From Octopus bimaculoides (taxonomy: Eukaryota), in the NCBI RefSeq assembly GCF_001194135.2, contig NC_068993.1:60479690-60543689 (forward strand): a stretch of DNA of 64,000 nucleotides. The letters run 5' to 3'. Both the position numbers and the translations under genes were made by a program. This document shows positions 1,588 to 50,227 of this stretch, in pieces; within the stretch, counting starts at the first letter, position 1, and every line of letters begins with the position of its first letter. The notes under the pieces were generated by a model, which ran no database searches, had not been told where the DNA came from, and saw only the letters and a program-made list of their open reading frames with translations.

Positions 1588-2366
1588 GGTACTATTCAAG
1601 AAGAGTGCACGCACTTGCACACTCGCGTATCCGCGCTAGCTAGTCGTGACTAGTCGATCCTACAACGACTATGTAACGCGAGTGCGCGCCATGCGCAAAA
1701 CAATTATGAGGGTTTTTTTTTAAACAAAATAAATAATTTTTTTTAAACAAAGTAAATATAACACAAAGTAAATAATTTTGTTGTTGTTGTTGAATCTTCC
1801 CCATCTTACTCTTAAAACGTTGTTTTACTTCCTTCCAGGGTGTATTTTGGTGTCACATCTATTTCAGTAATCCCATTGTACGACGCACTCCAACAATCAG
1901 AATATATAGTCGTCCCTGGTTTGATAAATTTTTTAATAAATGGTAAAAGAGTTTCAGAAGAACGGTCAGGTACAAAGACTAAAAAACCTATTTTTATCCT
2001 CTCTATCCCAACCTCGGTTGTATTTGCGCTTCCACATCATAGATTCATCTGTTTCTACGATGTGCCCAAGTCCACCAATTTAATAGGGGTTACGCAAAAG
2101 CTAATTACTTGTAATGTCCCTCATGTACTGATACCATTGAACAACAGTAGATTTTGAAAGACCAACTTTTTAATGAACTCCTTACCAAAAACAGGTAGTG
2201 TATAATTTATTTACTTTGTTTAGAAAAAAATTATTTACTTTGTTTAGAAAAACCCTCATGTGCATGACGCGCACTCGTGCTAGGTAGTCGTAGGATTGAC
2301 TAGTCACGACTCGCTAGCGCGGATGCGCGAGTGCGCGCACCGGGACCATTCTTGTTGAATAGTACC
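1588..2366 (-). mobile_element. Merlin-superfamily DNA transposon, internally deleted and non-autonomous
   Basis: TIRs at ~1588-1757 and ~2205-2366 begin GGTACTATTCAA and end TTGAATAGTACC. Perfect 9-bp TSD TAAAATTTC at 1579-1587 and 2367-2375. A transposase remnant lies inside. Confidence 0.93.
1800..2190 (-). pseudogene. Merlin/ISXO2-like DDE transposase fragment with stops, frameshifts and deletions
   Basis: Minus-strand translation: LSKSTVVQWYQYMRD..IGGLGHIVETDESMMWKRKYNRG / GIERIKIGFLVFVPDRSSETLLPFIKKFIKPGTTIYSDCWSASYNGI..PKYT / WKEVKQRFK. VETDES (2041-2058) and IYSDCW (1890-1907) carry the first two catalytic Asp residues; the HxxTIE(S)xW segment with the catalytic Glu is deleted. Confidence 0.9.
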
Positions 2367-2524
2367 TAAAATTTCATCTTGGGTGCATAATAGCATTATC
2401 AAATTGTCCCAGTAATTTATGGGTTTACTAAAAGTTAGCGGAGAATATAGTCTTTGTGTGTGGAAAATGTGCAGCTACAATAAGCCCTAAAAATATACGG
2501 ACAACAGGCTCCCTCAAATGCTCA

Positions 2525-3410
2525 GGTAGAAGTAGTAGATAGCTTTTGTTACCTAGGAGACCAAGTTAGCAGTGGGGGAAGGAGTACTGAAAGTGCAGTT
2601 GCTAGGATAAGAACAAGCTGGGAAAAGTTCAGAGAGCTTCTACTTTTGTTGGTAACTAAGGGCCTTTTGCTCTGAGTGAAAGGCAGAGTATGTTTTGTAC
2701 CTGTGTATGTACAGCTGTGATACATGGCAATAAAACATGGTCTTTGATGACAGAGGACTTGTGAAGGCTTAAAAGAAATGAAGCTAGCATACTCTGCTGG
2801 ATGGGTAATGTCAGTGTGCATGCATGACAGGTGTAAATGATTTAAGAGGAAAACTGGTTATGTAAGAGGCATCAGATGTTGTGTGCAAGGGAGAAGGGTG
2901 TGCTGGTTTGGTCATGTGATGCGTATGAATGAGGGCAGCTGCATAAACAAGTGCCATGCTCTAATTGCAGAGGGAACCTGTGGAAGGGGTAGACCCAGGA
3001 AGACATGGGACGAAGTAGTGATAAAGGATCCTTGGGTACTGAGCAGCACAGAGGAAATGACAAGGGGTCAGGAGATATGGAAATTTGCTGTACTTGATAA
3101 GACATATCAAGTTAAGTAAAATGGCTGTCTTCCGCACACAGGCTTCTCCTTTCGGGGACTGGTGCCACTTAAAAAGCATGCTTGGTGGTGCCGCATTAAC
3201 ACACCTGTGTCAGTGCTACATAAATTCACCCACGCCAGTGGCACACAAGGAACACCCAGCACATTCTTTTAAGTGGTTAAAGTTAGGAAGGGCATCTAAC
3301 CATAGAAACCATGCCTCAACAGAGGGAGTTTGGACAGCTCCACAGCTGACCAGCTCCATGTCAAACCATCCAACCCATGCCAGCATGGAGAGTGGACATT
3401 AAATCATCAT
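2525..3410 (+). mobile_element. RTE-clade LINE 3' fragment (RT C-terminus plus 3' UTR/tail)
   Basis: Translation VEVVDSFCYLGDQVSSGG..AVARIRTSWEKFRELL..WFGHVMRMNEGSCINKC..GTCGRGRPRKTW, followed by a tail ending CCATGCCAGCATGGAGAGTGGACATTAAAT before a CAT/GAT repeat. Confidence 0.88.
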
Positions 3411-4393: not shown

Positions 4394-5460
4394 TATATAT
4401 ACACATACATATATGTATATATGCATATGTATATACATGTGTGTTTATATGTATATATTTGCATATGTCTATATAAATATATATACGAAATACACAGGTG
4501 CACACACACACACACACACACACATTCAGAATTACAATAGGAATATTTAAAATTGGAATAATAGAATATATTAAAATGGAAATGTTTCATGATTTTAATA
4601 AGATATGCCTCTAAGGAAATATGTTCCCTGTATTCAGAATGTTTCGTTCTATTTGGCGGTGGCAATGGTGGTGGTGGTGGTAGCAGTGGTGATGGTGGTG
4701 GTGGTGGCAGTGGTGGTGGTGGTGGTTTTGGCAGTAGTGATGCGGGTGGTGGTTTTGTTCTCTTTTGCTGGGTTATGTGCTTGACTACGTATAGCGGCTT
4801 AATCTTGTGAATATATTGATTTCAAACAATATCAAAGGAATCCGCCCCCCCCACCACCACCACAAAAAAAGAAAGAAAGGTAAAATAAACCAAGTACAAA
4901 ACAACATAGAGTACATCTTTATAAACTTCCATTGAGCGGCAATTTCATTTTTTTTTTTTTGTTTGTGTGTATGTTGTTTCTTTAAATGTGTTCTGAATTT
5001 GATCTAAAATGATGTTACAGTTATTTCGGAATATTAATCTTAGCAGAAGTGTTTGATTGGTGACAGAAAGTATTGCAGGTCCCGTTTGCTTGACGAGGCT
5101 AGTAGGATTTACTTCGGCAGATGTTACTAAGCTCCTTCGATGACGAGACACAATAATCTGTTATGAATAAAGGGTGCCAAACCTCCCCTGGTGCCAGGGG
5201 ATCGTTTGGTACCAGGACACAGAGAAAGAATAAATTTTAAAACTATATTTCTATTTCATTAACCATGTCCTTGCATTATATACATGTATATATATATATA
5301 TATATATTATATATACCATATTTTAATGTGTATAAGGAACCCTCTAATTCTGGGGACTTAAAATTTGGAAAAAAGGTTTTGTAAGGGATTATAATACTAT
5401 CCATGTATAAGAAACCCCCATATTTCTTTAACCTAATTTTTGACGTAAAAGGGTTCTACA

Positions 5461-5731
5461 GTTCCATATTTAAGAGATGAGGAATTATGTACATTATTTA
5501 CATTATTTACATTTGACAGATATTTGTCCTCGTCTTGTTTGTCGTTAACAGAAAGTTTCGGCTGATATACCCGCCAGCCTTCATCAGGTGTCTTGGGGAA
5601 ATTTCAAACCTGGGTTCTCATTCCTAAGGTATTTTTCGATGTTGTTATTGTTATTATTATTATTCAGGTCATTGCCTGGAATCAAATTTGGAATCATGGG
5701 GTTAGTAACCCGCACGCTTAACCACTACGCC
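5461..5731 (-). mobile_element. tRNA-headed, hammerhead-containing non-autonomous element (complete copy)
   Basis: The minus strand reads TGGCGTAGTGG (A box)..tRNA-like head..(AAT)n..body..hammerhead motif..AT-rich tail. Collinear with 49146-49388. Confidence 0.8.
5547..5592 (-). ncRNA. Minimal type I hammerhead motif (decayed copy)
   Basis: GACAC-CTGATGA-A-GGCTG-gcgggtatat-CAGCC-GAAA-C-TTT-CTGTT. Core CUGAUGA/GAAA is intact; the stem III G is replaced by T. Confidence 0.6.
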
Positions 5732-5889
5732 ATAATAATAATAATAATAATAATAATAATAGTAACATCAAAAAATACCTTAGGAATGAGAACCCAGGTT
5801 CGAAATTTCCCCAAGACACCTGAAGAAGGCTGGAGGGTATATCAGTCGAAACATTATGTTAACAACAAACAAGATTAGGACAAATATCC
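5732..5889 (+). mobile_element. Headless second copy of the same element, inverted against the first
   Basis: (AAT)n-AACATCAAAAAATACCTTAGGAATGAGAACCCAGG...GGACAAATATCC is the reverse complement of ~5519-5665 at roughly 85-90% identity by eye. Confidence 0.85.
5815..5860 (+). ncRNA. Minimal type I hammerhead motif (decayed copy)
   Basis: GACAC-CTGAAGA-A-GGCTG-gagggtatat-CAGTC-GAAA-C-ATT-ATGTT. Core is intact; CpG-type decay (CG to CA) in stem III. Confidence 0.6.
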
Positions 5890-6220
5890 AGATATTGCTG
5901 GTTTAAATGCTAAAAGGTTAAAAGGTCTGAGAGGGAACCAAACCACAGAAACAATATTAACCCTTTAAGCAGTCAGGGTTCTTTGTCAAATTTTATGTTT
6001 CTTTGTAATTTACATTGTTTTGAATTAATCCTGGATTATCTCATAGCTTCAAGATTTCAAATTATGTGATTGCTTAGTTTTAGAATGACATTGTAGGGCA
6101 GGTGTGAGAGATTGGATTTTAACATAAAATAGGGAGAATATTTGAGCCAGATATGACCAGATTAAATGCTAAAGACTTAAACTACACTCCTTTCTGTCTG
6201 TGACTACTTTTTGTTTTTAG

Positions 6221-6324: not shown

Positions 6325-6409
6325 GTAAGTGGCATTTCTTCTTGCAACTTGCATTCTGAGTTCAAATTCTGATGAGGGCAACTGTCTTTCATTCTTTTTT
6401 TGGGGGCAG

Positions 6410-6700
6410 GGCTCAATAAAAAAATACCAGTTAATTACTGGAATCAAACTAATTGATTTGTCCCTCTGTCTAAAAAAATTGCTGGCTTTGTGCTAAAATT
6501 TGAAACCATTATATAAGTGGTAAGATGGCAGAATAATTGCCATATCCAACAAAATGGTAAGTTCAGATTCTGCCAAGGATAATTTTGTCATTCCTTCTTT
6601 CAAGGTCGTTAGAATGAGTACCAGTAAAACGCTAGGGTCAATGTAATCGATTTGACCTCCTTCATTCAAAATTGCTGACTTGATACCAAAATTTGAAAGG
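6410..6700 (+). mobile_element. Two degenerate family B SINE pieces in tandem
   Basis: Similar to 35481-35701 (TGGCAGAAT..., AGTACCAG.., GTCAATGTAATCGA.., CAAAATTTGAAA). Confidence 0.65.
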
Positions 6701-11285: not shown

Positions 11286-11339
11286 TATGGGAAGAAAGCG
11301 TTGAAATCTGTTACCACATATAAATAACAGTAATATATT

Positions 11340-11525
11340 ACTTTCAAATTTAGGCACAAGGCCAGCAATTTCAGGGGAAGGGTTTAGCCGATTACATCGA
11401 CACTGGTACTTATTTTATCGACCCCAAAAAGGACAAAAGTCAAAGGTGACTTCTGCAGAATTTGAACTCAGGATGTAAAGACAAATGCCCGATGTACTAA
11501 CAATTCTACCAGCTCATCACCTTAG
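11340..11525 (-). mobile_element. Family B SINE
   Basis: TTCAAATTTAGGCACAAGGCCAGCAATTTC..GATTACATCGA..ACTGGTACTTATTTTATCGACCCC..GAATTTGAACTCAG..CCAGCTCATC. Confidence 0.85.
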
Positions 11526-14100: not shown

Positions 14101-14483
14101 TGGAGGCACAATGGCCCAGTGGTTAGGGCAGCAGACTCGCGGTCATAGGATTGTGGTTTTGATTCCCAGACCAGGCGTTGTGAGTGTTTATTGAGTGAAA
14201 ACACCTAAAGCTCCATGAGGCTCCAGCAGGGGATGGTGGAGAACCCTGCTGTACTCTTCCACCACAACTTTCTCTCCCTCTTACTTCCTGTTCTGTTGTG
14301 CCTGTAATTCAAAGGGTCAGCCTTGTCACACTGTGTCACGCTGAATATCCCCGAGAACTACGTTAAGGGTACATGTGTCTGTGGAGTGCTCAGCCACTTG
14401 CAATTTAATTTCACGAGCAGGCTGTTCCGTTGACCGGATCAACTGGAACACTTGACGTCGTAAGTGACGGAGTGCCAACAACA
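14101..14483 (+). mobile_element. Full-length tRNA-derived SINE, family C, with TSD
   Basis: A box TGGCCCAGTGG, B-box-like GGTTTTGATTCC and (CAA)n tail. 12-bp TSD ACATTTCTCAGA at 14089-14100 and 14484-14495. Confidence 0.92.
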
Positions 14484-14988
14484 ACATTTCTCAGAGTAAT
14501 CTAAAGAGCTAAAAGTCAACTCCTGCAAAAAATGTAAATAATGTAAATAATGAAAACTAGAGGTATTTTTAGTCTACTGCTTCTGTGGTCAGCATTTGAA
14601 AGTGTTTGTACTTCTATTTTAACCAGCAGTAACTATGATAGCCGTTAGTAAATACTAAAGCTATTAGTAACGATAGCCACATCAATTACTACTATAACTC
14701 TCTGAAGCTACCAAAGTCACCAATAGTCACTCTTTTAGCTGTCAATATCTGAAAGAAATTATGTTGATGTGTACTTAAGTGTCTAAACATATTTCTATTG
14801 CGTTCAGTTTTCACAAATAATCACTAAGTCACTCACCGTGTAACATATTGAATAGATTGTGGATAAAATTAAAATATAAAATTAAAAATAGACTTACAAA
14901 AAAAAAAAATGAGCAAATTTTAAAAAGCAAATTATTTTTTGTGTGTTTGTGATATCAACATTGAATAGAAGATATGTGTGTGTGTGTG

Positions 14989-38829: not shown

Positions 38830-39075
38830 TGGAAAGGTCGTTGGGGGACATACCCCTCAGCCGTCTCATCCACGGGGTCCCATCAGATGCAACGTCAGGA
38901 AACTTTCCAGCTGGATCCCCAAGCGTGATCAGCAGAGATTATAGATGCTATCCAGCCATTTCGTTCTTAGTTTAGCCTGAGATCGCTTTCCGGTTGGCTC
39001 GGCTTGAAGAATCTTTCTTGCGATTCTTTCCGGCGACATTCTGCATACATGTCCACAGTCCGGTAAAATCAGGAA
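38830..39075 (-). mobile_element. LINE RT C-terminal remnant (RTE-like)
   Basis: CGHVCRMSPERIARKILQAEPTGKRSQAKLRTKWLDSI. Confidence 0.75.
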
Positions 39076-39653
39076 TTCGAGAAAAAAACAAACAAACAAA
39101 CAAAACAACTGGTGCTAGTCTGAATTTGTAAGAATGAATCAATAAGAGAATTCAAAGAAAAGTTCAGTTGTATAGTTGCTGGGAAGAGTGCAGAATGTGA
39201 CGGTTCGGATAATTGTTCTTCATCGAAAAGTGAATAGGAGGAAGCGAAGGAAGGGAGAGAAAGGAAATGGCGTTGCTATTTGGGTTGTTGGCAAGTAAAT
39301 GAGATTGAGCTGACGTAGGCGAAAGGTAAAGTTGTGAATATATATATATATNNNNNNNNNNNNNNNNNNNNNNNNNNNNNNNNNNNNNNNNNNNNNNNNN
39401 NNNNNNNNNNNNNNNNNNNNNNNNNNNNNNNNNNNNNNNNNNNNNNNNNNNNNNNNNNNNNNNNNNNNNNNNNNNNNNNNNNNNNNNNNNNNNNNNNNNN
39501 NNNNNNNNNNNNNNNNNNNNNNNNNNNNNNNNNNNNNNNNNNNNNNNNNNNNNNNNNNNNNNNNNNNNNNNNNNNNNNNNNNNNNNNNNNNNNNNNNNNN
39601 NNNNNNNNNNNNNNNNNNNNNNNNNNNNNNNNNNNNNNNNNNNNNNNNNNNNN

Positions 39654-48900: not shown

Positions 48901-49085
48901 GAATCAGCAAAGATGTTATATGAGCTGTGAATAAAAGCTTTATTTATATCGACTTATTTATAATAGCTTAATTTATAGAAGGACATAACTAGCAAAAAAC
49001 TGGGATATTTCATGTTTTTTTAAACGTTCGTAATTCCGTTTCTATGCAGAAATTTATAGAACGTGAACACTTGATTCATTAAACA

Positions 49086-49388
49086 GTTCTATATTTAAGA
49101 GATGAGCAATTATGTACATTATTTACATTATTTACATTTGACGGGCATATGGTGTAATGGTTCAGAGCGCAGGCTACTAACCTCAAGATTCCGAGTTCGA
49201 TTCCAGGCAGTGACCTGAATAATAATAACGATAATAATAATAATAATATCGAAAAATACCTAAGGAACGAGAACCCAGGATCGAAATTTCCCTAAGACAC
49301 CCGATGAAGGCTGGAGGGTATATCAGCCGAAACGTTCTGTTAACAACAAACAAGATGAGGACAAATATCCGTCAAATGTAAATAATGT
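49086..49388 (+). mobile_element. tRNA-headed, hammerhead-containing element preceded by an inverted copy of its own tail
   Basis: 49086-49145 is the inverted tail (same start as 5461). 49146-49388 reads TGGTGTAATGG (A-box-like), GAGTTCGATTCC (B box), (AAT)n, body, hammerhead motif, tail CCGTCAAATGTAAATAATGT. Confidence 0.85.
49296..49341 (+). ncRNA. Minimal type I hammerhead motif (one core substitution)
   Basis: GACAC-CCGATGA-A-GGCTG-gagggtatat-CAGCC-GAAA-C-GTT-CTGTT. U4 is replaced by C; stems II and III are intact. Confidence 0.62.
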
Positions 49389-49494
49389 TGATTCATTATG
49401 TTAAAAACTTTGGTTATATCTTCGACTTCGACCCATAGTTAAGGTCGATTAAAGCGTAATACTCGAACACACGTATGTCGTCAAAAGCAGAATT

Positions 49495-49715
49495 ATATTT
49501 GCTTCAAATTTAGGCACAAGGCCTGAAATTTTCGAGGAGAGAGTTAATCGATTACATCGACCCCAATGCTCAACTGGTACTTATTTTATAACCTCCAGAA
49601 GGATGAAGAGGCAAAGTCGACCTCGGCGGAATTTGAACTCAGAACGTAAAGACTGCCGAAATACTGCTAAGCATTCTGCTCAGCGTGCTTAACGATTCTT
49701 CCTCTTCACCGCCAT
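49495..49715 (-). mobile_element. Family B SINE
   Basis: TTCAAATTTAGGCACAAGGCCTG..GGCAAAGTCGACCTCGGCGGAATTTGAACTCAGAACGTAAAGAC..GCTTAACGATTCT. Confidence 0.9.
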
Positions 49716-50227
49716 TACATGCATCTATAATATTAACCCAAGTGGTCTTTAAGTACAGAAATTATTTTTTGATTTGAGTATTCATTATTTGTTAACTGCT
49801 TTGGTTGTTGTTTTTTTATTGTCGATGCCATTCTAAACATCTGTAAAACAAAAAAAGCTATAAATTGTCGAGTTTACCTCTTTAATGTCTGCACCATCTG
49901 TGACATTTCTACTGTCTTACTCTTTAAAACAGAATCTGTCGAGAGAATCTCACATTTCATCCTAGTTTACGTCAGTTGACTTTAAACGACTTGGCGGTTC
50001 GTTTCGGGCCCAAACCCCGCCATCTCACTGCATTGTATCGTACCACACCGCATCACGTTGCTATTAATGTGGAAATCACAAAAGAAATGACTGACGTTTT
50101 TCAATCAAATCATTAAAAGAAACCAGACCTTTCAAATGGAAGGAGCTGCTTCGATTTCTGATGCATCTCTTTTGGAACAATTGCTTCGTACAAAAGGGTT
50201 TGGCAAGGGGGACAGAGTGGGGGGGTC

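What the first reader, a model, noticed from the sequence alone, without database searches (positions are those of the whole stretch)
49086..49388. SINE-like element joining a tRNA-type Pol III head to a hammerhead ribozyme (second locus at 5461-5889)
Seen: a ~245-270-bp non-coding element with A and B boxes, an (AAT)n spacer and a minimal type I hammerhead fold. The three motif copies (5547-5592, 5815-5860, 49296-49341) each carry a different single defect, so their majority consensus GACAC-CUGAUGA-A-GGCUG-loop-CAGCC-GAAA-C-GUU-NUGUU restores the core and stems II and III. Established: Penelope-like elements carry minimal hammerheads with a palindromic stem III that cleave as dimers, and Pol III repeats with hammerheads are known (Schistosoma Sm-alpha; animal retrozymes give circular RNAs). 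Inference: this is a Penelope-dependent SINE/retrozyme hybrid, transcribed by Pol III, self-processed and mobilised in trans by a PLE RT/GIY-YIG. I do not know of a description in cephalopods but cannot exclude one.
Basis: partly seen in the sequence, partly recalled or inferred. Interest (0 to 1): 0.85.

Follow-up and report, generated by a model that had tools for sequence, protein, structure and literature searches.

The report
tRNA-headed repeat with Penelope-type hammerhead
A short non-coding mobile element joins a tRNA-like promoter head to a minimal hammerhead-ribozyme motif of the kind carried by Penelope retrotransposons, and both insertions look Penelope-made rather than LINE-made; this would be an unusual SINE, but only three decayed copies could be examined.

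Summary
Two copies carry a tRNA-type A box and B box at canonical spacing, followed by an (AAT)n linker. A minimal-hammerhead descriptor hits only these copies in the window and nothing in 300 random windows.

Some details need correcting:
- CUGAAGA in copy 5815-5860 is a legal core, not a defect.
- Position 16.2 differs in all three copies (G/U/A), so the helix III palindrome is inferred from CpG decay, not restored by a majority.
- Rfam hammerhead models and ARAGORN recognise nothing.

New evidence:
- Locus A is a single insertion (49082-49387) bounded by an 11-bp target-site duplication.
- Locus B is a head-to-head inverted pair with one 5'-truncated arm.
- A discrete ~59-nt "tail" module sits at one end of each insertion.

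The best reading is a tRNA-headed, Penelope-dependent non-autonomous element. The "retrozyme" label is not supported, because there are no tandem direct repeats. No external copies or partner element could be retrieved. It is a new variant of a known kind, of moderate interest.

The parts
49071..49081 (.). Left copy of the 11-bp target-site duplication TTGATTCATTA at locus A
   Evidence: This 11-mer occurs only twice in the 64-kb window, at 49071 and 49388, flanking the insertion.
49084..49142 (-). 'Tail' module T (59 nt). Here it is inverted and abuts the 5' end of the tRNA-type head
   Evidence: It is 96% identical to 5459-5517. Its last 17-18 nt recur inverted at 49372-49388. It lies inside the TSD.
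49143..49215 (+). tRNA-type head of copy A (A box 49150-49160, B box 49194-49204)
   Evidence: The A/B boxes have 2 and 1 mismatches and canonical 44-nt spacing. At these thresholds this is the only such pair in the window; 0.025 are expected by chance. It is not foldable as a cloverleaf.
49216..49248 (+). (AAT)n linker of copy A
   Evidence: The genome's major SINE ends in (AAT)n, so the linker is probably a relic SINE tail (inference).
49249..49371 (+). Body of copy A, ending in GGACAAATATCC. It contains the min-hammerhead motif at 49296-49341, with predicted cleavage between 49336 and 49337. The core is broken by U4>C (CCGAUGA), and ACGU is retained
49372..49387 (+). Partial tail (first ~16-17 nt of T in sense orientation) at the 3' end of copy A
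   Evidence: It forms an inverted repeat with 49125-49142 and runs directly into the right TSD.
49388..49398 (.). Right copy of the 11-bp TSD at locus A
5459..5517 (-). Tail module T attached to the 3' end of the inverted copy B-left
   Evidence: It is present at one end of the locus B insertion only.
5518..5734 (-). Copy B-left, nearly full length (it lacks the first 6 nt of the head). Components: body 5518-5640; min-hammerhead 5547-5592 with an intact core (CUGAUGA) and 16.2 G>U; (ATT)n 5641-5664; head 5665-5734 with a perfect A box at 5732-5722
5735..5766 (+). Central (AAT)n at the head-to-head junction of locus B
   Evidence: Its polarity is opposite to the (ATT)n at 5641-5664, so it belongs to the right arm of the mirror-image pair.
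5767..5889 (+). Copy B-right, 5'-truncated within the linker (no head). Its min-hammerhead at 5815-5860 has a legal core CUGAAGA, a G-U pair at 10.2-11.2 and 16.2 G>A
5446..5455 (.). Candidate left TSD of locus B, TAAAAGGGTT. Its candidate partner is TAAAAGGTT at 5911-5919
   Evidence: It is a 7-9 nt match with one indel. I estimate a chance probability of about 0.01-0.05, so it is only suggestive.

Best explanation
This is a composite non-autonomous retroelement of about 230 nt, plus an optional tail of about 59 nt.

**Anatomy.**
- A tRNA-derived head carrying an internal Pol III promoter (A and B boxes).
- An (AAT)n linker, probably the relic 3' tail of an older simple SINE.
- A 3' module derived from the terminal repeat (pLTR) of a Penelope-like element. 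This module carries a minimal type I hammerhead with no hairpin helix III. Such a motif can only assemble an active core as a dimer through the palindrome ACGU.

**Proposed working.**
1. Pol III transcribes from the head through the body (inferred).
2. The Penelope-type 3' module recruits a Penelope RT/GIY-YIG protein in trans (inferred).
3. Integration leaves the Penelope signature: a TSD of about 10 bp, a head-to-head inverted 5'-truncated companion copy, and an optional tail at one end (shown at these two loci).

The hammerhead is the hallmark of the Penelope module. Whether it cleaves, or mainly serves as a recognition or processing structure, is not known. The three copies here are dead, each about 4% diverged from a common source.
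For: - **Motif not chance.** The descriptor hits only this family in the window and nothing in 300 random windows.
- **Penelope min-hammerhead features not imposed by the core search are all present.** These are an unpaired A between A9 and G10.1, a G10.1-C11.1 pair, a 6-bp helix II, a 4-bp helix I and the ACGU palindrome at 15.1-16.1 (copy A). Compare with Cervera & de la Pena 2014, PMC4209133. That paper also reports dual motifs 100-700 bp apart on opposite strands, which is what locus B shows.
- **Stems intact.** All 30 stem cells pair in the three copies. The single stem substitution gives G-U.
- **Head.** The A/B pair at exact tRNA spacing is the only one found in the window at <=2/<=1 mismatches (copy A), against a chance expectation of 0.025; B-left has the same spacing with a perfect A box and a decayed B box. 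There is no TTTT on the sense strand of any copy, while the antisense strand has TTTT(T).
- **Unit mobilisation.** The 11-bp TSD encloses tail, head, linker, body and partial tail at locus A. Locus B is a mirror-image pair whose microsatellite runs have opposite polarity.
- **Penelope-type insertion anatomy.** It matches Craig et al. 2021 and Arkhipova et al. 2013, PMC3846280: an inverted 5'-truncated copy at the 5' end, a tail on one end only, 8-10 bp TSDs, and capture and trans-mobilisation of unrelated sequence by pLTRs.
- **No LINE-type tail.** There is no poly(A) and no plain microsatellite at the 3' end.
Against: - Only three decayed copies exist, and no copy has every feature intact. 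Position 16.2 differs in all three.
- There is no compensatory change, so covariation has no power.
- Rfam hammerhead models give nothing.
- Predicted thermodynamics do not favour the hammerhead fold: -3.2 against an MFE of -11.0 kcal/mol. This is common for hammerheads.
- The window holds no Penelope ORF and no element sharing the 3' module.
- There is no direct tandem arrangement.
- The tail contains (AAATAATGT) repeats that resemble LINE 3' repeats. A 23-nt identical stretch ends a different repeat at 14530-14552, so a LINE partner is not excluded.
- The hammerhead lies 34 nt from the body's 3' end, so cleavage would detach the promoter-bearing part from the 3' end.
- The TSD at locus B is weak.
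Confidence: 0.55

Rival explanations
1. It is an ordinary LINE-mobilised composite tRNA SINE. On this reading the body merely contains a fossil fragment of Penelope origin, so the hammerhead is a passenger. Mobilisation depends on the TAA-like 9-mer repeats of the tail, used for example by a Dong/R4-type LINE that recognises (TAA)n-like 3' repeats.
For: - The major SINE of this window ends in (AAT)n.
- The tail carries (AAATAATGT)2-3, and the same 23-mer ends an unrelated repeat at 14530-14552.
- Dong-R4 LINEs are abundant and recently active in octopus (PMC13282606), if the window is indeed from an octopus.
- TSDs of variable length also fit LINE integration.
Against: - Both loci (2 of 2) carry inverted partial duplications of the same segment. 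LINE twin priming inverts non-overlapping segments, so it does not explain this.
- The tail is absent from B-right and only 17 nt long in A, so it is not a constant 3' end.
- The (AAT)n is internal, not terminal.
Confidence: 0.2
2. It is a Penelope pLTR-derived non-autonomous element that transduced a piece of a tRNA SINE between its repeats. On this reading the head is cargo, not a working promoter. Transcription comes from read-through or from a pLTR Pol II promoter, so it is not a SINE in the strict sense.
For: - Penelope pLTRs are known to capture and mobilise unrelated sequence between direct or inverted pLTRs with TSDs (PMC3846280).
- At locus B the head sits between two inverted bodies.
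- T carries a TATA-like TATATTTAAG upstream of the head.
- The head does not fold as a tRNA.
Against: - The same head-linker-body junction recurs in two independent insertions.
- The A box is perfect in one copy and the B box near-perfect in the other, at exact tRNA spacing.
- Only the sense strand is free of Pol III terminators.
Confidence: 0.15
3. The hammerhead-like motif is a chance resemblance inside a SINE body and has no ribozyme ancestry.
For: - Rfam gives no hit.
- There is no covariation.
- The hammerhead fold is not the predicted MFE.
- Every copy departs from the ideal motif in at least one place.
Against: - The descriptor gives 0 hits in 300 random windows, about 35 Mb of searched strand.
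- Four extra Penelope-specific features that the descriptor does not require are present.
- The insertion anatomy independently points to Penelope.
Confidence: 0.05
4. It is a DNA transposon, a MITE or a foldback element with terminal inverted repeats.
For: - At locus A an 18-bp inverted repeat (49125-49142 against 49372-49389) brackets the unit.
- Locus B is a long inverted repeat that folds as a hairpin. That hairpin explains the spurious Rfam plant-miRNA hits.
Against: - The left arm of the inverted repeat at locus A is internal, about 43 nt from the left end, so it is not terminal.
- The termini next to the TSD are not inverted copies of each other.
- An 11-bp TSD is atypical for DNA transposons.
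- The two loci differ in architecture.
Confidence: 0.03

Closest known systems
Penelope-like element min-hammerheads in pLTRs, and the dispersed solo motifs (Cervera & de la Pena 2014, PMC4209133; Lunse et al. 2017)
   Same: - Type I topology with no helix III hairpin.
- A palindromic 15.2-16.2 pair, which implies action as a dimer.
- An extra nucleotide between 9 and 10.1, and a G10.1-C11.1 pair.
- A long helix II and a 4-5 bp helix I.
- Dual motifs on opposite strands a few hundred bp apart.
- An insertion anatomy of inverted 5'-truncated copy, tail and TSD.
   Different: - No RT/GIY-YIG ORF and no direct pLTR tandem are present.
- The motif is fused downstream of a tRNA-type Pol III head and an (AAT)n linker.
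- Sequence relatedness to any actual Penelope pLTR could not be tested.
Schistosoma Sm-alpha / Sj-alpha SINE-like retroposons (Ferbeyre et al. 1998; Laha et al. 2000; summarised in PMC6765202)
   Same: They are short non-coding repeats that combine a Pol III promoter with a type I hammerhead.
   Different: - Sm-alpha has a canonical hammerhead with a helix III and loop-loop contacts.
- It occurs largely in tandem arrays, from which units are cut out.
- Here the motif is the minimal Penelope type, the copies are dispersed or inverted, and the promoter lies upstream of the ribozyme.
- No sequence comparison was possible.
Animal non-LTR retrozymes (Cervera & de la Pena 2020; de la Pena et al. 2020, PMC7761336; Li, Clavereau & Pollet 2026, bioRxiv 10.64898/2026.07.22.740005)
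   Same: They are non-coding repeats that carry a type I hammerhead and are proposed to be non-autonomous derivatives of Penelope pLTRs.
   Different: - Retrozymes are tandem direct repeats with a hammerhead in every unit, and they yield circular RNAs.
- No tandem arrangement exists here, and a tRNA head is not a retrozyme feature.
Classical tRNA-derived SINEs with LINE-derived 3' tails (for example the octopus OK/OR SINEs of Ohshima & Okada 1994, and the major (AAT)n-tailed SINE in this window)
   Same: - A tRNA-type A/B-box head.
- A modular head-body-tail build.
- Target-site duplications.
- An (AAT)n tract like the tail of the neighbouring SINE family.
   Different: - The 3' module is of Penelope type rather than LINE type.
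- There is no terminal poly(A) or plain microsatellite.
- The insertions carry inverted companion copies.
Short non-autonomous Penelope elements annotated in insects (Heliconius; PMC6685494)
   Same: They are short non-coding derivatives presumed to use Penelope proteins in trans.
   Different: No Pol III head or hammerhead analysis is reported for them in the text I could read.

Membership tests
Hammerhead ribozyme, canonical type I (Rfam Hammerhead_1 and related models) | Catalytic core CUGANGA ... GAAA ... UH | tested here: met
   The core is intact in B-left (CUGAUGA) and B-right (CUGAAGA). Copy A has CCGAUGA. GAAA and U16.1-U17 are present in all three.
Hammerhead ribozyme, canonical type I (Rfam Hammerhead_1 and related models) | Three helices, including a closed helix III hairpin; match to the curated covariance model | tested here: not met
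   There is no helix III hairpin: ACGU has zero loop. No Rfam hammerhead hit appears at gathering score, nor at E<=10 in 400-nt and 61-nt scans.
Hammerhead ribozyme, canonical type I (Rfam Hammerhead_1 and related models) | Self-cleavage at the H17 site | not testable with these tools
   This needs in vitro transcription of monomer and dimer constructs.
Penelope-type minimal hammerhead (min-HHR, Cervera & de la Pena 2014) | Unpaired nucleotide between A9 and G10.1, plus a conserved G10.1-C11.1 pair | tested here: met
   CUGAUGA-A-GGCUGG...UCAGCC-GAAA is found in all three copies.
Penelope-type minimal hammerhead (min-HHR, Cervera & de la Pena 2014) | Palindromic 15.2-16.2, with no helix III loop or a palindromic one | tested here: inconclusive
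   C-G is present in copy A only. B-left has C-U and B-right has C-A. Ancestral G is inferred from CpG decay.
Penelope-type minimal hammerhead (min-HHR, Cervera & de la Pena 2014) | Short helix I (4-5 bp) and long helix II | tested here: met
   Helix I has 4 bp and helix II has 6 bp including G-U. All 30 of 30 cells pair.
Penelope-type minimal hammerhead (min-HHR, Cervera & de la Pena 2014) | Located in, or derived from, the pLTR of an element encoding RT plus GIY-YIG | not testable with these tools
   The window holds no such ORF. No other sequence of this genome could be reached.
Penelope-like insertion architecture | Head-to-head inverted 5'-truncated copy adjacent to a fuller copy | tested here: met
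   At locus B, B-left (-, nearly full length) is joined through (AAT)n to B-right (+, truncated in the linker).
Penelope-like insertion architecture | Short 'tail' extension present at one end of the insertion | tested here: met
   The 59-nt module T sits at 5459-5517 (one end only) and at 49084-49142, with a 17-nt partial copy at the other end of locus A. At 59 nt it is longer than the published 30-40 bp.
Penelope-like insertion architecture | Short target-site duplication | tested here: met
   Locus A has an 11-bp TSD that is otherwise unique in the window. Locus B has only a weak candidate.
Penelope-like insertion architecture | Partial direct tandem (pLTR) arrangement | tested here: not met
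   There is no direct tandem copy at either locus.
tRNA-derived SINE | Internal Pol III promoter: A and B boxes at tRNA spacing | tested here: met
   A reconstruction from the two heads gives a perfect A box and a 10/11 B box.
tRNA-derived SINE | 3' end shared with a partner LINE, or poly(A)/simple-repeat tail | tested here: not met
   The body ends in GGACAAATATCC with or without the tail. There is no poly(A), and (AAT)n is internal. The LINE comparison itself was not possible.
tRNA-derived SINE | Transcription by RNA polymerase III | not testable with these tools
   The only indirect evidence is that the sense strand lacks TTTT and the antisense strand has it.
Animal non-LTR retrozyme | Tandem direct repeats, each with a type I hammerhead, giving unit-length circular RNA | tested here: not met
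   There are only one single copy and one inverted pair. No two sense-strand hammerheads lie on one strand within a locus.

The most novel reading that the evidence does not exclude
This is a true SINE that parasitises Penelope-like elements instead of LINEs. On this reading a tRNA-promoter head with a relic (AAT)n tail, inherited from a LINE-dependent ancestor, acquired a Penelope pLTR module with its dimer-dependent hammerhead. That would be a partner switch between two retrotransposon orders. The family would then be a Pol III-driven source of hammerhead RNAs in a cephalopod genome.
Probability: 0.4. Interest if true: 0.7.

Novelty: new variant of a known kind. Interest (0 to 1): 0.55.

Why it matters
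SINEs are defined in textbooks by their dependence on LINEs. Penelope-like elements are a separate retrotransposon order whose integration mechanism and hammerhead function remain unclear.

A high-copy, tRNA-promoted element that carries the Penelope 3' module would give three things:
1. A natural reporter for which cis sequences Penelope RT/GIY-YIG needs in trans.
2. A case where the hammerhead sits in a Pol III transcript with a defined start. This would make 5' and 3' end mapping, and the dimer-cleavage question, directly testable.
3. An example of partner switching in SINE evolution.

It would also change how part of the very large "unclassified SINE" fraction reported for octopus genomes (PMC13282606) should be annotated. 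All of this depends on genome-wide confirmation.

Tried and rejected
**Attempts to obtain more copies all failed.**
- I translated the element, which has frames open for 45-68 aa, and searched the 5.8-billion-protein collection with a 3-row alignment. It gave 0 hits.
- I searched with a LINE-like ORF fragment from 2841-3116 as a handle on contigs of the same genome. It gave 0 hits, so this organism is apparently not in that collection.
- Exact-pattern scans with two conserved 21-24-mers found 0 matches in metagenome, GTDB genome and viral contigs.
- A full-text search for sequence strings of the element found only irrelevant primer matches.

**Model-based recognition.**
- Rfam gave nothing relevant in the gathering scan and three E-value scans. 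The plant-miRNA and snoRNA hits are artefacts of the 290-bp inverted repeat and of low complexity.
- ARAGORN found no tRNA at default or relaxed thresholds.

**Analyses that were uninformative.**
- Thermodynamic folding of monomer and dimer does not reproduce the hammerhead fold.
- The covariation count has no power with three near-identical rows.
- Substitutions inside the motif versus outside show no sign of constraint, as expected for dead copies.

**Rejected readings.**
- I rejected the MITE/foldback reading and the model of two separate elements that merely sit next to each other (see rivals). The reasons are the opposite polarity of the two microsatellite runs at locus B and the TSD that encloses head and body at locus A.
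- A regex scan for RT (YxDD) and GIY-YIG motifs found no Penelope ORF in the window.

Full report
**What is there.** The sequence at 49086-49388 and 5461-5889 holds three copies of one repeat. This was checked with blastn at word size 7 and with nhmmer using profiles of the body, head and tail.
- Copy A is 49143-49371 (+).
- Copy B-left is 5518-5734 (-).
- Copy B-right is 5767-5889 (+).

Nothing else in the 64-kb window belongs to the family. A three-way alignment gives this anatomy: a ~73-nt tRNA-type head, an (AAT)n linker of 9-11 units, and a 123-nt body ending in GGACAAATATCC. A hammerhead-like motif lies 34 nt before that end.

**Is it more than chance?** I wrote a minimal-hammerhead descriptor after Cervera & de la Pena 2014: helix I of at least 4 bp, CUGANGA, 0-1 extra nucleotide, helix II of at least 4 bp closed by G10.1-C11.1, GAAA, two nucleotides, U, H.
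- Without the palindrome requirement it hits only B-left and B-right in the whole window on both strands.
- It hits nothing in 300 first-order Markov windows of the same composition.
- The tRNA-type promoter test looked for A box TRGCNNAGTGG and B box GGTTCGANTCC at 28-50 nt. At <=2/<=1 mismatches its only hit in the window is the head of copy A, and 0.025 hits are expected per random window.
- B-left has a perfect A box and a B box decayed at a CpG.
- In both heads the boxes start 44 nt apart, exactly as tRNA positions 8 and 52 do.

- CUGAAGA in B-right is a legal core, because position 7 is free.
- Only copy A has a broken core (U4>C).
- Position 16.2 is G, U and A in the three copies. The ACGU palindrome that would make the intermolecular helix III is therefore not restored by majority. 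I infer an ancestral G because many differences between copies lie at CpG sites: 192, 209, 223, 275, 286 and 297.
- Rfam's curated hammerhead models do not recognise the motif at any threshold I could apply. E-values there are multiplied by 4227 families, so the negative is weaker than it looks. Those models also expect a helix III hairpin, which is absent here.
- ARAGORN finds no cloverleaf even at a 60% threshold. The head is tRNA-derived by promoter boxes and spacing, not by fold.
- All 30 stem positions pair in the three copies. There is no compensatory change, so covariation says nothing.
- Predicted energies do not favour the hammerhead fold, which is uninformative for this ribozyme class.

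**New anatomy.**
- *Target-site duplication.* Locus A is bounded by an 11-bp direct repeat, TTGATTCATTA. It occurs only at 49071 and 49388 in the whole window. The inserted unit is therefore 49082-49387.
- *Tail module.* The unit contains, upstream of the head, a 59-nt module T (49084-49142). T is 96% identical to 5459-5517. In locus B the same module follows the 3' end of the inverted copy B-left. In locus A its first 17 nt also follow the 3' end of copy A in sense orientation, giving an 18-bp inverted repeat around the unit. B-right has no T at all. So T is a discrete module that starts exactly at the end of GGACAAATATC(C/T) and is present in full at only one end of each insertion.
- *Inverted pair.* Locus B is a head-to-head pair. 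B-left is nearly full length, lacking 6 nt of the head. It is joined through (AAT)n to B-right, which is truncated inside the linker. The two microsatellite runs have opposite polarity, (ATT)n at 5641-5664 and (AAT)n at 5735-5766. The locus is therefore a mirror duplication, not a microsatellite split by separate insertions.
- *Age.* The three bodies are 91-92% identical in every pairing, a star-like pattern. This fits near-simultaneous origin from one source followed by independent decay.

**Comparison with published Penelope features.** Cervera & de la Pena (PMC4209133) list four features of Penelope min-hammerheads that their search did not impose:
- a nucleotide between 9 and 10.1;
- the G10.1-C11.1 pair;
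- palindromic 15.2-16.2;
- families with a short helix I (4-5 bp) and a long helix II.

They also note dual motifs 100-700 bp apart on opposite strands. All of these are seen here, with the palindrome intact in one copy only. Craig et al. 2021 and Arkhipova et al. 2013 (PMC3846280) describe Penelope insertions as follows:
- frequently 5'-truncated;
- often with an inverted 5'-truncated copy at the 5' end;
- a 30-40 bp tail on one end only;
- TSDs of 8-10 bp;
- a link with simple trinucleotide repeats and template jumps;
- pLTRs able to mobilise unrelated captured sequence in trans.

Both loci fit this description. Neither looks like a plain LINE-driven SINE insertion.

**Best explanation (confidence 0.55).** This is a composite non-autonomous element: a Pol III tRNA-type head, a relic (AAT)n tail, and a Penelope pLTR-type 3' module with a dimer-dependent min-hammerhead, integrated by Penelope machinery.
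- *Shown:* the motif, the promoter boxes and spacing, unit mobilisation, and the insertion architecture.
- *Inferred:* Pol III transcription, supported only by the sense strand lacking TTTT while the antisense strand has it; trans use of a Penelope RT/GIY-YIG; and any cleavage.
- *Relic-tail idea:* it rests on the window's major SINE family. That family has at least seven copies, and the copy I read through to its 3' end, 35483-35750, ends in (AAT)n.

**Rivals.**
- *A LINE-mobilised composite SINE with a passenger Penelope fragment (0.2).* The tail contains (AAATAATGT) repeats, and an identical 23-mer ends a different repeat at 14530-14552.
- *A pLTR-derived element that merely transduced a tRNA-SINE fragment (0.15).*
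- *Chance (0.05).*
- *A MITE or foldback element (0.03).*
- *The "retrozyme" label fails its defining test.* There are no tandem direct repeats, so no transcript carries two sense hammerheads.

**Limits.**
- No other DNA of this genome could be reached. Protein-space and DNA-pattern routes all returned nothing.
- The window has no RT or GIY-YIG ORF.
The octopus repeat literature I could read reports abundant, largely unclassified SINEs and active Penelope elements, and makes no mention of hammerheads.

**Novelty.** Several related things are already known:
- SINE-like repeats with Pol III promoters and hammerheads (Schistosoma Sm-alpha);
- dispersed Penelope min-hammerheads;
- short non-autonomous Penelope derivatives;
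- retrozymes as Penelope derivatives.

I found no description of a tRNA-headed element with a Penelope-type min-hammerhead module and Penelope-type insertions in the searchable library. Repbase and Dfam could not be checked. I rate it a new variant of a known kind, with interest 0.55.

Noticed in passing
window 49495-49710 (-), 35483-35750 (+), 35271-35432, 11328-11482, 32758-32883, 6354-6697: This is the window's major SINE-like family, with at least 7 copies at 67-80% identity to the 49481-49900 query. The copy I read in full (35483-35750) shows a B-box-like GAGTTCAAATTCC and ends in an (AAC)/(AAT)n microsatellite. One copy lies about 110 bp downstream of locus A. The pair at 35271-35700 is in inverted orientation.
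   Followed up: partly
window 14530-14552 (within repeat 14295-14560; partial second copy at 62543-62679): A 23-nt stretch, AATGTAAATAATGTAAATAATG, is identical to the 9-mer repeats of the tail module T. It sits at the apparent 3' end of an unrelated repeat. This could mean the tail repeats are a shared 3' recognition sequence, or just a common minisatellite.
   Followed up: partly
window 5558-5849: Rfam E-value scans report plant miRNA precursor families (MIR7996, MIR5048, MIR2606; E down to 1e-17, below gathering score). These are artefacts of the ~290-bp inverted repeat of locus B. If transcribed, that repeat would form a long hairpin and might feed small-RNA pathways.
   Followed up: partly
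window 1815-2036 (-): An ORF fragment matches Pfam DDE_Tnp_IS1595 (ISXO2-like transposase): E 3.8e-6, 27.4 bits against a cutoff of 27. It is a relic of a DNA transposon.
   Followed up: partly
window 2484-3116 (+) and 38932-39114 (-): These ORF fragments carry the motif WFGHVMRM...GRGRPRKTW, which from memory is typical of the C-terminal region of LINE reverse-transcriptase proteins. Pfam gives no hit, and the protein collection holds no homologue.
   Followed up: partly
window 5890-5910: An unexplained 21 nt (AGATATTGCTGGTTTAAATGC) lies between the 3' end of B-right and the candidate TSD. Its first 7 nt form a near-palindrome with the element's end (AATATCC/AGATATT). This is reminiscent of the junction palindromes described for Penelope insertions.
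   Followed up: no
whole window: The window contains 6226 N in many gaps, mostly flanked by (TA)n/(CA)n-type microsatellites, and has 34% G+C. It looks like a draft short-read assembly of a repeat-rich intergenic or intronic region, with no convincing protein-coding ORF.
   Followed up: no
window ~149 (-): A single RT-like YADDM motif lies in a short ORF at the left edge of the window. It may be the end of a LINE that runs off the window.
   Followed up: no
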